A stretch of 64,000 nucleotides of DNA. It comes from Guillardia theta CCMP2712 (taxonomy: Eukaryota; Protista; Cryptophyta). The number at the start of each line of letters is the position of its first letter. Within the stretch, counting starts at the first letter, position 1. The position numbers and the translations under genes are program-made. Shown piece by piece: positions 51,423-57,615 of this stretch. The stretch covers positions 763,023 through 827,022 of the forward strand of contig NW_005434673.1 in NCBI RefSeq assembly GCF_000315625.1, in the 5' to 3' direction. Below the pieces are notes generated by a model that searched no databases, was not told the origin of the DNA, and worked only from the letters and a program-made list of their open reading frames with translations.

Positions 51423-53647
51423 ATGGAAGGGGAGGGAAACAAGAGGATACGGTGAGATGAGAAAAGAGTATGCGAGCTAACGAGAAGATGCTGCTGCATT
51501 GAGATGAAACGAGCGTTGCAAAACCACAGTGACGCGTTGAGATAGGTTTCCCACGGAGACCTCAAATCTACAGATCGCTGTTGACCTCTGCGATGAAGGC
51601 ATGATAAGCTCTCGGTTTGTTGAGCGAAAGGAATGCTCATGATGCTGTCTTGTTTGCGGCAGGTGGTTGCATCGAGATACTACCAGGCACATATTTCGTG
51701 AATGCAATCATCATGAAAGATCTTACATTGCGGGGGATGGGTAAGTTGTTTAGTTGTCTTGGGAGTGATCTGACTGATAGACAAGGTGATCAAAACAACA
51801 CCGCACTCGTTTCACGCTTCTGCTGTACTCTGGTCATTGAGAGTTGTAAGGTATCATGTTCGATCCCGACATCGCGATAGCGCAGCAGTGTGACTTTGGA
51901 CAGGTGAACCTGGAAAACCTCACGCTGGCGGTGAGTGAAGGGACTCTGACCGATCACGCCATGGAGCTTCATGAGGCTTCGGTCACCATGGAAAGGTGAT
52001 GTGGTCCGAGCACATGCTGCAGCTTCAGCTGATGATTGTGTTTGACGATCAGCTGCGATGTCTACGGAGGAACAGCAGCTCTGTTTGCCAATTCTAACTC
52101 CAAGATAGCGGCGACTCAGTAATGGACCGATGAGCTCATTCAATCATGATTGACGTCCTGAAACTGACAGCTGTCAGTATCATGATGCACATTCGTTCGG
52201 AGTTGCCTTGATGAACTCTGAAGCTGAATTCTTGGATTGCTATTTCTTCAGGTGATTATTCCATTTCAAGGCATCTGGCGTCGAGTGATGGCTGGCAGGA
52301 ACGGAGAAGATGGGTGTAACATAGGGGGCAGTGCAGCCAAACTTGAGCTGCAAAATTGTAGGTGGGGACAACAAAGGAAGCAGCAAGATTAAAGGCTGAC
52401 ACTGATGGATCAGAATATCCGACAACACTTGCTTCGGTGTGCATGTACATGACGGGGCGTCCATGGCCGCCAATAAATGCAACGTGATCAAGAACGAGCA
52501 GGAAATCCCTCATGGGTAGATTACACTCTTCAGCGGAGTGACAGGCATGAATAGGCTGGAGTTATGATCAGTGGGCACGATTCCAACCATCTCAAGAGTA
52601 CAGGGATTATGAAACAGTCATGCGCAGAATTTCAGGACTGCAGAATCAAGCTGAACAAATGGCAAGGGATCTTCGTTCTCGACGGGTCTCTCAAAGTGAG
52701 CCTTGATCTCTGCCAAGTTTCAGCACACTCTATGACAACATGATGCAAGTGTGTTGGTTCTGATCTTCGTCATAATGAGAGGGGAGCCCTCGTGAGTCGA
52801 AAAGTTTGCAAGCTCGGCGTAAACGAATCACGACAGGTTCTGACGACATCGAAGACCGCTGTCATTTCGGACATCAATAGATTGAAGCTACCATACGTTG
52901 ATGTCGAGTACTATGAGAGCTGTAAACTGGGAGAGGCAAGCTCCTCTTGGCCGACTGTCTTGCAATTCTGATCATTGAAAGAAGATTGAGCTGGCGGATA
53001 ACAAGGCGGTGAGAAAAGATGCTGAGCTGGAGTTCACTGGGTCATGGGACTTCCCCCAAGATTGGAAGTCTCGCCCTAAGGATGAGGCTCGTTCAGAAGC
53101 ATCCTTACCCCCCCTGCCTCATGACACATATTCATCAGGTCCTTGAAATCTATAAGAAGTGCTCGATTGATCTGCAGAAGAGGCTGCACAACTATCCCAA
53201 CGGTACGCAAGCAAGTGGTGCTATGACTGGCTCTGAGAACAAGGAAGGGTGGGAGGATAGGATATTGCGAGATCCCAAGGCCTACATGCTGATTGAGCGG
53301 CTGTTTCGAAACATTGAGCAAGAAACGGATACAGACATTGATGAATTGGATATGGAAATCCATGAATTTCTACAGGATCTTGGATTAGGTAATAGCCATC
53401 TATACTTCTGTCTCTCACCCCTGGATGATCCCAGAAAGATTCGTTGAGAGGTTCAGAAAGCTGGACTGCAATGCCGTCAGGGATCTTCTTCCCATGAGGG
53501 ATACTGACTTCGTGTGAGCGTGAGCCTGTTCATCAAGACGTGCACTGAGATTGCAAGAGGAACATTGGGATCAAAGACACAAAGGATCGCAGAAAATTGA
53601 ATTCAAGAATCGCAGCTTTGTACGCGAGCCGTCAATTTGTAGTGTGA
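51423..53647 (+). CDS. Right-handed beta-helix (pectin-lyase fold) protein with a C-terminal SAM domain, many short exons
   Basis: IEILPGTY..LTLRGMG cap, repeats such as DNTCFGVHVHDGA and NKWQGIFVLDG, and a C-terminal FLQDLGL..RF..DLL....NIGIK..DRRKL segment (SAM). Confidence 0.6.
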
Positions 53648-53748
53648 GTGTAATCATCTAGCAGATCAGGAGCTAGCCATGCTCCTCAGCATTTAGTTCC
53701 TTGCAAATTTGCATCCTTGATAGAAGCCACCAAGTTTCAGGTTGAGTG

Positions 53749-54208
53749 ATGGCTGAATCCGGCATGATTGAGCGTGGCTGCAGGCAAGAAAAGCTGACAA
53801 ACAACGCAACTACGAAGAATGGAAGAAGCTTCGCTCTCTGTTTGCTGATCGCATTGGGGTTCCTTCCTCCTCTACTCACAGAATGCCATCCTGACTCTGC
53901 GCAGTTCAACACCACAGGAGCCGATGTCGACACGAAGCTACGGAAACTGTTCAGTGAGCTCGATGTTTCGAGGACAGCAGGACAGCGAGGAATACACGTT
54001 GACGAGCTGAAGAAAGGCCTCCAGGTACACAAGTGACTGTCTTTGCAAAATGACTTGGTTGCCTTACTTGTTTCCTACCAAGAACATGGGGGTGAAACTT
54101 GAGGAGATCAGATTCAATATCCTCATGAGCGAGCTTGACAGCAATGACATTGACTACATGAGCTATGAGTCTTTTTGCAAGGCAATAGAACATATTCTAC
54201 GAACTTAG
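53749..54208 (+). CDS. Small EF-hand-pair protein with a signal/TM segment (2 exons)
   Basis: LRKLFSELDV..GIHVDELKKGL and LMSELDSNDIDYMSYESF; hydrophobic FALCLLIALGFL. Confidence 0.65.
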
Positions 54209-54329
54209 CTCTCAATCAGTTATGAATCATCACAAATCAAAACGCTGTTTAATACATACGTTCGTCTGAAAGCTCTGCATTGTCGAATTTACACAGAGCC
54301 CTGCACTGCACTATGCACTGACACATTGA

Positions 54330-54823
54330 TCAGTCTTTGCCAACTTTGAGTTTCATCTGTGTTGCCATTAGAAATTCGTACGTGTCGTACGTGTCATCAT
54401 CGTCATGAGCAACACGAAATTTCTGAGAACCTTCAAGAGCCTCTCTACAATCATCATGAAATTTCTGAAGCCTAACCCGCAATTCTTGGACGAAACCTGG
54501 ATCTTCGCTATTGTAAGTGCAAGATAATGAGAGAGTGCGAGCTACGGACACACCGAGCGTCTCGGTGAATGCTCTCAATTCGTCCTCTATCTTCTTTATA
54601 CCTTGATCAACCTCCACATAGAGCAAGTCTTCGACAGCATCCATTTCGATCTCATACTGTGCTGTCTCCCCGTACAACTCGCCAACTTTCCGCTCGAACC
54701 AAGTCTCGAACTCAGCTGCCTGCAGCCTCAAGGCGTCAGGTGGCTGCATGACCTCAAGTCTTGTCTTACTTTGCTGATGGCATGCATGTCATACTTCCCT
54801 GTGCTCCCGAAGTTGCTCGCCAT
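54330..54823 (-). CDS. CPI-17/PHI-1 (PPP1R14)-like protein phosphatase 1 inhibitor
   Basis: Exon 1 (54823-54770) joins exon 2 across a 50-nt intron (54769-54720) to give STGKYDMHAISKAAEFETWFERKVGELY...EDLL...FVQELRVRLQKFH. Confidence 0.7.
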
Positions 54824-56113
54824 GCTCTCCGATCCTCCGCTACCTCCCTCTCGGGTGCTCGTTTGACCACCAGGACTTGCTCCTAAAACTGTTTTAGACC
54901 GGTCTCCGATTCCTCGGACAACGAGGGCCGCCGGCCCTACAGCTGGCACCACTCGGGCACTTCACTGAGAGCTTACCGTCAGTCAGTCAGACCTCATACA
55001 GCACACGGTGGTTGGTGAGAGCACATCTCAACTGCCGTTGTTTCATAGCCCACAGGTGACCTCCTTTACTAGTACGACACGGCGAGAAGAGAAAAGACAG
55101 CGAGAACCAAAACTGCTGTACCCCAAACTTAACTGATACCTTCACTTAACTGCGCGCAGGACCATTCCCCCGCGCCATGCCAGCGACCGCCGCCGAAGGA
55201 ACTTGATCAGACGCATACCCAAGTCGGATCCCCAGAGACATCGATGGCGAGTAATTGCTGGCCCGGCCCGGGCGGCGTCACTGAGTTGGCCCGGCGGTTG
55301 TCACGGCAGTGGCAACGGGCCGGCTACTTTTACTATGATCCTGTTATGATCCCTCACTGAGGAGTGTGCTGTAGGTGTCGGCCATAGAATTTTTTATAGT
55401 TCTTGAATATCTGCATTTTATATTTGAAAACACACTCCACAATTCATTCGATGACCTCAAAATATACCATTCTAGGACCATTCTGTATGAAATCTACGAC
55501 CACCCTATGACGACTTTACGATACTCAGGGGCAGTGGGGGTATTTTCCTAGGCTGACACTAGGACCAGGCCATAGTAGATCCGAATGAATCCCAATTTCA
55601 TAGCCCTGCATCAAACATGTCGGAATGAAATGGTGTTGCGACGTTGAAAGAGAAAGGGACGAGGCAAGAAGATAGAAGGCGCTGATGAGGTAACAACTCC
55701 GAAATCAGGATGTTAGCAGGTGTAGATCCATTGCATCTTATAGTTTCCAACGGTCTTCGACCATATTTGCTCCAATGTGTGCCATACACTCATTGCTTGC
55801 TCATGCGCTCGCAGCCCAGAATCTCTCGTAACCACCCGAGGAAGCAGCTATTCGCCCTGATAGCTATGAGAGCCAAGTATGATCGGAATAGAGATAAGAG
55901 TGGGAGAGAGACGAGCGAGAGAAGCTCTGTTGGACAATCACCAACCCGGTAACCGAAACAAGACCCGGTAACCGAAACATGATAGAAGGTGCTAGTACAG
56001 TGTAGGACGTTTGAAGAGAGAGAGAGAGAGAGCAAGAACCGAGTATTGCAGGGTTCAGTGAGAGAGAATAAAGTGAGGAGACGGAGACAATTTGATACAG
56101 ACAGATTCTAGAA

Positions 56114-57615
56114 ATGAGAATAAGGGACGCATCAAAGGCAGAGTCAAGAATACATTATATTCGTTGCTGATTCTACGAACCTGACCACACTCTCTAGACT
56201 TGTTCAACCCCTCAAGGCTTAACATGATGGAAAGTAAGATTCGACTGCCTCAGTTGAAGAACTTTCGTCAAAGTGCTGCACCGCCTGAGGTTCCTTCCTT
56301 GAATATCCAACTAGGAGATGAGAACACATCCAAGAACACAAGCCCTGTTGCTGAATTGGATGGCAACTCAGTTGTACACAAGACAATTCAGATGTACAAT
56401 CATATGAAGTCGCAGTCTTCGCTAGTGGGAAACCAAGGTGTTCCAACTATTGTATCCAAGGACAGTGCGCAAATCGAACTGCAGATTGACCTGGCGAAGA
56501 ATTTTTACGATGTAAAGAGTCTATGGGATCCGTCTGGTCCCTTGACCTACAGGAATGGGAAGAGATCTCAGCATGATTGTATTGATATGGAACCATTCAC
56601 GTGCTCGTGTGTGATGGACATTCAATCAAACTCGTTGAAGACTGATGATGGAGCAGCTGCCGTCATCACTTGCGAAGAACTGATTGCTTGTCCAATGCTT
56701 CTCAGCTTGACAGCATGGACATCAACCGATGATAATCACGGAGAGGTATTCAGACCTTGTTGCTTCAGTCTTGTTTTGACACAACTGTGCAGGACATTGG
56801 TATCTATGATGGTAGCGATCTTACCCAAGCTATCAGTGTCCCTGAGAAAGAAACGAACAACTCAGTCCACGGAGAAAGCGTCGTGAGCCTGGCATCTTCA
56901 CGCTCTCAAGACATATGCGATGCTGGAATGGACGGCGAAAAGCCTGATTGCGTTGTACAATTGCTGCAGGAATTGGGTTTGCAGGTTTCTTGCTTACTAT
57001 CAAAAAATGTACCCTAAGATCATTTCAGGATATCATTCCCAATTTTGAGCTGAGAAGAATTGGATTGCAAGAACTTTCAAGGATGTCAGACAATGATTTG
57101 AAATTGCTTGGCATCGACAAGCTTGGAAAAAGGTTTGATTCTTTTATTTGGATTGCAGTAATAATGAAATTTGCAGAGTAAAACTAAGGCAAAGAGCTCA
57201 ATTGCTCGTTACTTCTCCGAGCAAGGTTGAGTCACTATCCTTGTACGGATCTTCCTCTTCGTCAGCCTCAAGTTTGCCGCAATTCGATGAAATCAAAAGT
57301 TCCTTGGAGATTTTTGATCGAAGACAATCCTACGAGATCCTAGATGCGATTGACCATGATCTTCAAGTGGAGCAGATAGAAGATCACCCTCTCAACAACC
57401 TCCGGTCATTGATCATGGACGTTGAGACGAAGTGGAAGCAAGCTCTGGTCTCCTGGCATGTCTTTCTGTCATGTTGTACTGATGCATTTCTGGTGGATAG
57501 GAGAGGCAGCAACAGGCCAGCATGGAAGCAAAAATCTACGAAAGACAACTCCGCAACCCGACTCTTCTTTTACTTGCCAATTCTTTACAAGCAGATTATT
57601 ATCTCAATGAAATGA
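56114..57615 (+). CDS. SAM-domain protein (multi-exon; ends approximate)
   Basis: Spliced VVQLLQELGLQ|DIIPNFELRRIGLQELSRMSDNDLKLLGIDKLGKR|VKLRQ matches the SAM consensus. Confidence 0.6.

What the first reader, a model, noticed from the sequence alone, without database searches (positions are those of the whole stretch)
54330..54823. A CPI-17/PPP1R14-type PP1 inhibitor in a non-animal (probable cryptophyte) genome
The ORF track misses this because the key motif sits in a separate first exon. After removing a canonical 50-nt intron (54769-54720) the protein reads T-G-K-Y-D-x10-E-T-W-x6-E-L-Y. This aligns without gaps to the CPI-17 inhibitory domain as I recall it (TVKYDRRELQRRLDVEKWIDGRLEELY): T, KYD, E, W and ELY fall at identical spacing. 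The downstream FVQELRVRLQKFH resembles the last helix (FIQELLAKLQGLH). The family is characterised in animals as a PKC/ROCK-activated myosin phosphatase inhibitor. The phospho-Thr is retained, but the upstream basic residue is replaced (GST instead of RVT), implying a different activating kinase. Inference: an ancient phospho-switch on PP1 exists in algae.
Basis: partly seen in the sequence, partly recalled or inferred. Interest (0 to 1): 0.85.

Follow-up and report, generated by a model that had tools for sequence, protein, structure and literature searches.

The report
CPI-17-like phosphatase inhibitor in alga
A small three-exon gene of the cryptophyte alga Guillardia theta encodes a 130-residue protein whose first 89 residues match, end to end, the phosphorylation-switched PP1-inhibitor (PHIN) domain of animal CPI-17/PPP1R14, a family that the one paper read on the point calls vertebrate-specific; the inhibitor function itself is still untested.

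Summary
On the minus strand, ATG 54823 opens an 18-codon exon (T8-G-K-Y-D). Contigs from three sequencing studies show the 50-nt GT..AG intron 54769-54720 removed. The window is Guillardia theta CCMP2712, and the gene is GUITHDRAFT_99159, annotated as hypothetical.

The transcript data also contradict two introns in the public gene model. The real product has 130 residues.

A profile of this spliced protein finds CPI-17 as its top three hits among 177,635 solved-structure sequences (E 2.9e-5). Residues 8-89 align to 82 CPI-17 residues with no net gap. The unspliced profile finds nothing. Pfam PF05361 scores the mis-spliced public model 22.0 bits, against a cut-off of 22.4. Protein-language-model neighbours are all PPP1R14.

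Thr38, Lys40, Tyr41 and Asp42 are kept. Arg43/44 and the upstream basic residues are not.

I put homology at about 0.85. Phospho-dependent PP1 inhibition is inferred, at about 0.5. "Ancient" is not shown: relatives turned up only in Hanusia and one environmental Guillardia.

Structure models were too poor to use. No transcript contig reaches past the start codon. The exact spliced protein could not be given to Pfam.

The parts
54770..54823 (-). Exon 1: start codon plus 17 codons (MASNFGSTGKYDMHAISK). The Thr8 codon is 54802-54800. Lys10-Tyr11-Asp12 are at 54796-54788.
   Evidence: Sequence. Contigs cover 54769..54821/54822. 15 of 18 residues are identical in Hanusia, and the similarity begins only 5 residues before Met1. 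The exon is identical in L001 apart from one synonymous change.
54720..54769 (-). Intron 1, 50 nt, GTAAGA...CAG, with an in-frame TGA.
   Evidence: Joint 54718|54769, 'skips 50', CT..AC (cut +1), in X1, X2 and X3, which come from three studies. The public model P0002 uses the same junction.
54554..54719 (-). Exon 2 (166 nt): the rest of helix A (EFETW..GELY), helix B (VEDLLYVE) and helix C (IKKIEDELRAF).
   Evidence: Unbroken contigs cover 54554-54718 in X1, 54566-54718 in X2 and 54594-54718 in X3. The exon is 76% identical to Hanusia.
54503..54553 (-). Intron 2, 51 nt, GTGTGT...GAAG. It is in frame and has no stop, so ORF lists read straight through it.
   Evidence: Joint 54502|54554, 'skips 51', CT..AC, in X1 record 2 at depth 3.85, a single run. 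Removing it raises the match to CPI-17 from no hit to E 2.9e-5.
54330..54502 (-). Exon 3. It completes the junction codon Asp74 and encodes helix D (PGFVQELRVRLQKFH, ending at 54456). A 41-residue tail follows at 54455-54333, and the stop codon is 54332-54330.
   Evidence: X1 record 2 runs unbroken over 54402-54502. The tail is 80% identical in Hanusia. There is no transcript coverage of 54330-54401.
54456..54802 (-). PHIN-like domain, residues 8-89 of the spliced protein (the span includes both introns).
   Evidence: hmmsearch of profile A2 aligns positions 8-89 to residues 4-85 of chain 1k5o, at 27.4 bits and E 2.9e-5.

Best explanation
This is a single-copy, weakly expressed three-exon nuclear gene of Guillardia theta. 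It encodes a 130-residue protein. Residues 5-90 form a divergent PHIN domain homologous to that of animal PPP1R14 proteins (CPI-17, PHI-1, KEPI, GBPI). A 40-residue tail found only in the Guillardia and Hanusia proteins follows.

The most likely mechanism is inferred from CPI-17. A kinase phosphorylates Thr8. The phospho-Thr loop then docks in the active site of a PP1-type phosphatase as a pseudosubstrate. Tyr11 protects it from hydrolysis, and the helical bundle holds the loop in place.

The basic residues before the Thr and the Arg43/Arg44 pair are missing. The activating kinase is therefore unlikely to be PKC- or ROCK-like, and the target is unlikely to be a MYPT1-type holoenzyme.

Shown here: the gene structure, and statistically significant collinear similarity to CPI-17. 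Inferred: the fold, the phosphorylation and the PP1 inhibition.
For: - Splicing: both introns come from transcript contigs.
- Profile search: a profile equal to the spliced protein (A2, 130 positions, checked) ranks CPI-17 entries 1k5o, 1j2m/2rlt and 1j2n first to third among 177,635 PDB sequences, at E 2.9e-5 to 1.3e-4. The next hit has E 0.1. The alignment is 82 residues against 82.
- Control: the same proteins with the introns translated (A1) find no CPI-17 at E<=10. Exon 2+3 alone finds none. Exon 1 plus half of exon 2 gives E 0.76. The signal is spread over the whole domain and appears only with the splicing that the transcript data dictate.
- Reverse direction: PF05361 is the only Pfam hit on P0002 (22.0 bits, E 1.9e-4). 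It is also the best hit on Hanusia P0003 (E 0.21) and on P0002:1-57 (E 0.009).
- ESM Atlas: the top clusters are all PPP1R14 (0.89, 192 of 256 features). The best structural neighbour is a PPP1R14 cluster (TM 0.50). Nothing usable is left once PF05361 is excluded.
- Residues: Thr, Lys, Tyr and Asp of the T-x-K-Y-D loop are kept, as are Trp25, ELY and FVQEL..L..H. Tyr41 and Asp42 are reported as necessary for inhibition (PMC12347249).
- Genuine cryptophyte gene: it has short GT..AG introns, lies on a 1.4-Mb scaffold, is single-copy, and has orthologues in Hanusia and in an environmental Guillardia.
Against: - No sequence I could submit reaches the Pfam cut-off (22.0 against 22.4).
- Identity to pig CPI-17 is only about 26% (21 of 82) in a gap-free register. 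That is my own count from the alignment.
- Arg43/Arg44, reported as necessary in CPI-17, are Met13-His14 here.
- AlphaFold models were poor (pLDDT 45 and 50), and Foldseek found nothing. The fold is therefore untested.
- The Hanusia transcript lacks helix D.
- Contigs in all three runs stop at 54821/54822, inside the ATG, so the 5' end of the mRNA is not documented.
- Intron 2 rests on one low-depth contig.
- There are no data on phosphorylation or on PP1 binding.
Confidence: 0.6

Rival explanations
1. The domain is a true PHIN homologue but has been repurposed. It would not be a phospho-dependent PP1 inhibitor. It might be a constitutive binder, a regulator of another PPP-family phosphatase, or simply a PP1 substrate.
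For: Arg43/44 are replaced by Met-His, and there are no basic residues before Thr8. PMC12347249 lists Arg43/44 as necessary in CPI-17. A conserved 40-residue tail with no counterpart in PPP1R14 suggests additional partners. The Hanusia transcript lacks helix D.
Against: The residues that act at the PP1 active site (Thr, Tyr, Asp) are kept, and they are invariant between Guillardia and Hanusia. Arg43/44 are said to contact MYPT1 rather than PP1c, and LIMK2-1 inhibits PP1c with Pro-Lys at those positions (PMC12347249).
Confidence: 0.25
2. The resemblance is chance or convergence: a small, acidic, helical protein that happens to look like CPI-17 without sharing ancestry.
For: Scores are modest (27 bits; 22.0 bits, just under the Pfam cut-off). 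Identity is about 26%. There is no structural confirmation. Atlas scores are below 0.9, which that tool rates as a lead only.
Against: Two independent directions of HMMER search are significant and specific. The match spans the whole 82-residue domain with no net gap. It appears only after splicing that was defined from transcript data without reference to CPI-17. HMMER reported a bias of 0.1.
Confidence: 0.1
3. The mRNA starts at or after 54822, so translation begins at Met13. The protein would then lack the Thr-Gly-Lys-Tyr-Asp loop and would be a PHIN bundle without the switch.
For: Contigs in all three runs end at 54821/54822, and no reads cover the upstream region.
Against: Codons 1-12 are conserved at the protein level in Hanusia, while the sequence before Met1 is not. 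The Hanusia transcript extends at least 174 nt upstream of its ATG. The ATG has a good context, and L001 keeps about 100 nt of upstream sequence nearly unchanged. Low-depth assemblies routinely lose the 5' ends of transcripts.
Confidence: 0.05

Closest known systems
CPI-17 / PPP1R14A (PHIN domain, residues 35-120; PDB 1k5o, 1j2m, 2rlt)
   Same: It is the best PDB match (E 2.9e-5). The alignment is collinear, 82 residues against 82. The T-x-K-Y-D loop, Trp, ELY, the LL of helix B and FVQEL..L..H of helix D are all shared. Like CPI-17, the protein has no RVxF motif.
   Different: Identity is about 26%. Only 7 residues precede the Thr, and none is basic (GST in place of RVT). Met-His replaces Arg43-Arg44. 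There is a different, conserved 40-residue C-terminal tail. The host is an alga with no smooth muscle, and whether it has a MYPT1 is unknown.
PHI-1, KEPI, GBPI (PPP1R14B-D) and invertebrate PPP1R14 proteins, all in Pfam PF05361
   Same: Same family profile (22.0 bits on the public model). The nearest ESM Atlas clusters are labelled PPP1R14B, PPP1R14D and PPP1R14A, from nematodes and chordates.
   Different: Those three proteins carry an N-terminal RVxF-type motif (PMC12347249), and none is present here. 'KFRVAH' in the tail ends in His and is not conserved in Hanusia.
LIMK2-1 C-terminal PP1-inhibitory segment
   Same: It is a phospho-Thr-dependent PP1c inhibitor that lacks the Arg-Arg pair after the Y-D motif, having Pro-Lys instead. 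This shows that the pair is not needed for PP1c inhibition as such (PMC12347249).
   Different: It is part of a kinase isoform, not a free-standing small protein. I made no sequence comparison with it here.
Inhibitor-1 / DARPP-32
   Same: From my own knowledge: the logic is analogous. These are small proteins that become PP1 inhibitors once a Thr is phosphorylated.
   Different: From my own knowledge: they are unrelated in sequence, disordered, and depend on an RVxF motif. No match to them was seen in any search.

Membership tests
PPP1R14 / Pfam PF05361 (PP1_inhibitor) | Score at or above Pfam's gathering cut-off (22.4 bits) | tested here: inconclusive
   The public, mis-spliced model P0002 scores 22.0 bits (E 1.9e-4), and PF05361 is its only hit. 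P0002:1-57 scores 16.5 bits and Hanusia P0003 12.1 bits. Exon 2+3 alone gives no hit. The correct 130-residue protein has no reference and was not submitted.
PPP1R14 / Pfam PF05361 (PP1_inhibitor) | Collinear similarity to the whole PHIN domain of solved CPI-17 | tested here: met
   Profile A2 positions 8-89 align to 1k5o residues 4-85 at E 2.9e-5. CPI-17 entries take the top three places, and the next hit has E 0.1. The unspliced control finds nothing.
PPP1R14 / Pfam PF05361 (PP1_inhibitor) | Inhibitory Thr (Thr38) at the start of the domain | tested here: met
   Thr8 aligns with Thr38 and is conserved in Hanusia and in L001. Whether it is phosphorylated is unknown.
PPP1R14 / Pfam PF05361 (PP1_inhibitor) | Tyr41-Asp42 after the Thr (Tyr41 blocks dephosphorylation) | tested here: met
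   Lys10-Tyr11-Asp12 align with Lys40-Tyr41-Asp42. The role of these residues is taken from PMC12347249 and PMC7460850.
PPP1R14 / Pfam PF05361 (PP1_inhibitor) | Arg43 (the Y-D-R motif is said to be present in all family members) and Arg44 | tested here: not met
   Met13-His14 occupy these positions in Guillardia and in Hanusia. According to PMC12347249 the pair contacts MYPT1 Asp5.
PPP1R14 / Pfam PF05361 (PP1_inhibitor) | Four-helix bundle fold | tested here: inconclusive
   The AlphaFold models had pLDDT 45.1 and 49.9, and Foldseek found no match against the PDB. The helices predicted in the model fall where the alignment places helices A to D. The Atlas's own model reaches TM 0.50 to a PPP1R14 cluster.
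PPP1R14 / Pfam PF05361 (PP1_inhibitor) | Basic residues before the Thr, the PKC/ROCK recognition site (A-R-V-T in CPI-17) | tested here: not met
   The N-terminus reads M-A-S-N-F-G-S-T, with no basic residue.
PPP1R14 / Pfam PF05361 (PP1_inhibitor) | Phosphorylation-dependent inhibition of PP1 or its holoenzymes | not testable with these tools
   This needs biochemistry. No complex prediction was run, because the spliced protein and a spliced Guillardia PP1c have no reference and phospho-Thr cannot be specified.

The most novel reading that the evidence does not exclude
The PHIN-domain phospho-switch on PP1 is not an animal invention. Either it predates the split between the animal lineage and Cryptista and was lost or diverged beyond recognition almost everywhere else, or it moved between an animal and the Guillardia/Hanusia lineage. 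In the alga it is a working Thr8-dependent PP1 inhibitor, driven by a kinase that is not PKC- or ROCK-like and aimed at a holoenzyme without MYPT1.
Probability: 0.35. Interest if true: 0.75.

Novelty: new member of a known kind. Interest (0 to 1): 0.6.

Why it matters
PP1 takes its specificity from its regulators. Most of the ancient ones (for example Inhibitor-2 and Sds22, from my own knowledge) occur throughout eukaryotes. The one paper read on the point calls the CPI-17/PPP1R14 family "vertebrate specific" (PMC7460850), although ESM Atlas clusters show it in nematodes too. A full-text search for PPP1R14 together with protists found no paper.

A recognisable PHIN domain in a cryptophyte alga changes what is known of the family's range. 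It also offers a natural minimal version: almost nothing precedes the Thr, there is no Arg-Arg pair and there is no PKC site. That makes it a test of which features of the switch PP1c inhibition really needs. It also raises a question that can be tested directly, deep ancestry or gene transfer.

The public gene model for this locus is wrong in three of its introns.

Tried and rejected
- **PF05361 against the whole genome in six frames:** no candidate. The controls did not ring either, so this is uninformative.
- **Pfam on exon 2, exon 3 and the exon 2+3 ORF:** no PF05361 hit. There was only a weak Mg296 hit (19.5 bits against a cut-off of 25), which I take as chance.
- **Exhaustive phmmer over 1.84 billion representatives with the exon 2+3 ORF:** it found only P0001, P0002, P0003 and P0004. 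P0004 is a 1977-residue repetitive chitin-binding protein. Its eleven weak matches lie mostly over the translated intron 2, so I rejected it as spurious.
- **Two metagenome scans with conserved peptides:** no relatives.
- **AlphaFold on the exon 2+3 ORF and on P0002:** low confidence. Foldseek against the PDB found nothing at E<=0.001. No verdict on the fold.
- **Alignment A5:** MAFFT misplaced helix D, so I discarded it.
- **Passing a PDB chain id to protein comparison:** not accepted.
- **Raw-read RNA run X18:** no reads over the gene in the 6% of the run that was read.
- **Rfam over 53500-56500:** nothing.
- **Not run:** a Pfam scan, folding, or complex prediction of the exact 130-residue spliced protein. 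It exists only as a joined sequence with no reference, and I did not type it in.

Full report
**Where the window comes from.** The window is G000:C1:763023-827022 of an 87.1-Mb, 669-contig assembly. The protein encoded at the finding is recorded publicly as [quoted passage not shown] (P0002).

**Checking the observation.**
- On the minus strand, ATG 54823-54821 is the first in-frame ATG after an upstream stop. It has A at -3 and G at +4.
- It opens 18 codons that include T8-G-K-Y-D12.
- The next 50 nt (54769-54720) begin GTAAGA, end CAG and carry an in-frame TGA. Exon 2 continues with AAEFETWFERKVGELY.
- I laid contigs from four public runs on 54100-55150. Three of them (X1, X2, X3, from three different studies) each contain a contig that skips exactly these 50 nt. 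These runs are only guessed to be RNA, but a contig that lacks an intron can only come from spliced RNA.
- The public gene model joins the same two exons.

- One X1 contig (depth 3.85) also skips 54553-54503. This is a 51-nt GT..AG intron that is in frame and has no stop, so ORF lists read straight through it.
- The same contigs run unbroken across the two other introns of the public model: 54554-54628, 54566-54718 and 54402-54502. Those two introns are therefore not supported.
- The transcript-supported coding sequence is 54823-54770, 54719-54554 and 54502-54330. That is 393 nt and 130 residues.

**Is it related to CPI-17?** The spliced protein has no reference, so I aligned referenced pieces instead: exon translations, P0002:1-57, the environmental orthologue P0001 and Hanusia P0003. 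I confirmed with hmmbuild that the resulting profile (A2) has exactly the 130 positions of the spliced protein.

| Query | Best CPI-17 hit among 177,635 PDB sequences |
|---|---|
| Spliced profile A2 | E 2.9e-5, 27.4 bits; CPI-17 entries rank 1-3; next hit E 0.1 |
| Unspliced profile A1 (introns translated) | none at E<=10 |
| Exon 2+3 ORF alone | none at E<=10 |
| Exon 1 plus half of exon 2 | E 0.76 |
| Mis-spliced public model P0002 | E 0.004 |

- In the A2 search, the three CPI-17 entries (1k5o, 1j2m/2rlt, 1j2n) score E 2.9e-5, 3.8e-5 and 1.3e-4. Profile positions 8-89 align with chain residues 4-85, which is 82 residues against 82.
- The signal is spread over the whole domain. It appears only with the splicing read from transcripts, which was worked out without reference to CPI-17.
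- In the reverse direction, PF05361 is the only Pfam family that hits P0002 (22.0 bits, E 1.9e-4, cut-off 22.4). It is also the best family for P0002:1-57 and for Hanusia.
- The ESM Atlas feature search puts PPP1R14 clusters in the top places (0.89, 192 of 256 features), and all ten best family-bearing hits agree. Without exon 1 the top named clusters are still PPP1R14, at a lower score (0.78). Nothing usable remains when PF05361 is excluded.
- On this evidence I put homology at about 0.85.

**Residues** (the offset from CPI-17 numbering is 30).

| Status | Positions |
|---|---|
| Kept | Thr8 = Thr38, Lys10 = Lys40, Tyr11 = Tyr41, Asp12 = Asp42, Trp25 = Trp55, E-L-Y34, the LL of helix B, and F-V-Q-E-L-x-V-x-L-x-x-x-H of helix D |
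| Not kept | Arg43-Arg44 (here Met13-His14) and the basic residues before the Thr (the protein starts only 7 residues upstream) |

PMC12347249 states that Thr38, Tyr41, Asp42 and Arg43/44 are needed for inhibition. It also states that Tyr41 prevents dephosphorylation, that Arg43/44 contact Asp5 of MYPT1, and that LIMK2-1 inhibits PP1c with Pro-Lys at those positions. The active-site part of the switch is therefore present here, and the part specific to myosin phosphatase is absent. Identity to pig CPI-17 is about 26% in a gap-free register, by my own count.

**Is it a real cryptophyte gene?**
- It is single-copy in the genome.
- An environmental Guillardia contig (L001, ENA ERZ930064) is 98% identical over the exons (386 of 394 aligned positions) and 93% over the introns (95 of 102). 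A 1-nt indel just upstream of the ATG breaks the upstream frame there.
- Similarity to Hanusia phi begins 5 residues before Met1 and covers 15 of the 18 exon-1 residues. The intron-1 region has diverged.

**Limits.**
- Contigs in all three runs stop at 54821/54822, so no transcript data cover the A of the ATG or any 5' UTR.
- Intron 2 rests on a single contig.
- 54330-54401 has no transcript coverage.
- The Hanusia sequence reads through its intron-1 region in frame and lacks the 16 residues of helix D. I cannot explain this.
- The structure models were of low confidence, and Foldseek gave nothing.
- The exact spliced protein was not submitted to Pfam or to folding, because it has no reference.

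**Distribution and novelty.**
- An exhaustive phmmer search over 1.84 billion representatives found only the environmental Guillardia, the public model and Hanusia.
- Two metagenome scans found nothing.
- None of these searches could detect distant PPP1R14 relatives in other protists. "Ancient" is therefore not shown, and transfer between an animal and this lineage is equally open.
- PMC7460850 calls the family vertebrate specific, and no paper combining PPP1R14 and protists was found.

**Verdict.** This is a new, divergent member of a known family in an unexpected lineage. Its function is plausible but untested.

Noticed in passing
window 54330-54823 (-): The public gene model GUITHDRAFT_99159 (P0002, 109 residues) removes a 60-nt and a 54-nt 'intron' that transcript contigs cross unspliced. 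It also keeps most of the real 51-nt intron 2. Only its first junction is right.
   Followed up: yes
P0003 (Hanusia phi, EukProt), residues 77-92 and the junction at 147|148: The Hanusia sequence carries 16 in-frame residues where Guillardia has intron 1. It also lacks the 16 residues of helix D. It may be an unspliced or alternatively spliced transcript, an assembly fault, or a real difference.
   Followed up: partly
L001:397-888 (ENA ERZ930064 contig, 3863 bp): In this close Guillardia relative, intron 1 is 51 nt, has a GC rather than a GT donor, and has no stop, so a prokaryote-style gene call read through both introns (P0001). A 1-nt insertion also ends the protein one residue early.
   Followed up: partly
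window 55079-55111: A 33-nt block has read depth of about 80-115, with unmatched read ends on both sides that disagree between reads. The flanking letters are not in the window. This is probably a short stretch shared with highly expressed transcripts elsewhere, or a micro-exon.
   Followed up: partly
window 54100-54261: Contigs of 1.0-1.8 kb (depth 11-31) from a neighbouring transcript end at 54236-54261, about 70-95 nt beyond the stop codon of this gene. The plus-strand ORFs there (53746-54036 and 54050-54208) have no Pfam match.
   Followed up: partly
window 54333-54455 (-): The 41-residue C-terminal tail (DCREALEGSQKF...FLMATQMKL.VGKD) is 80% identical in Hanusia and has no counterpart in PPP1R14. 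The only hit is a weak, sub-threshold Pfam match to Mg296.
   Followed up: partly
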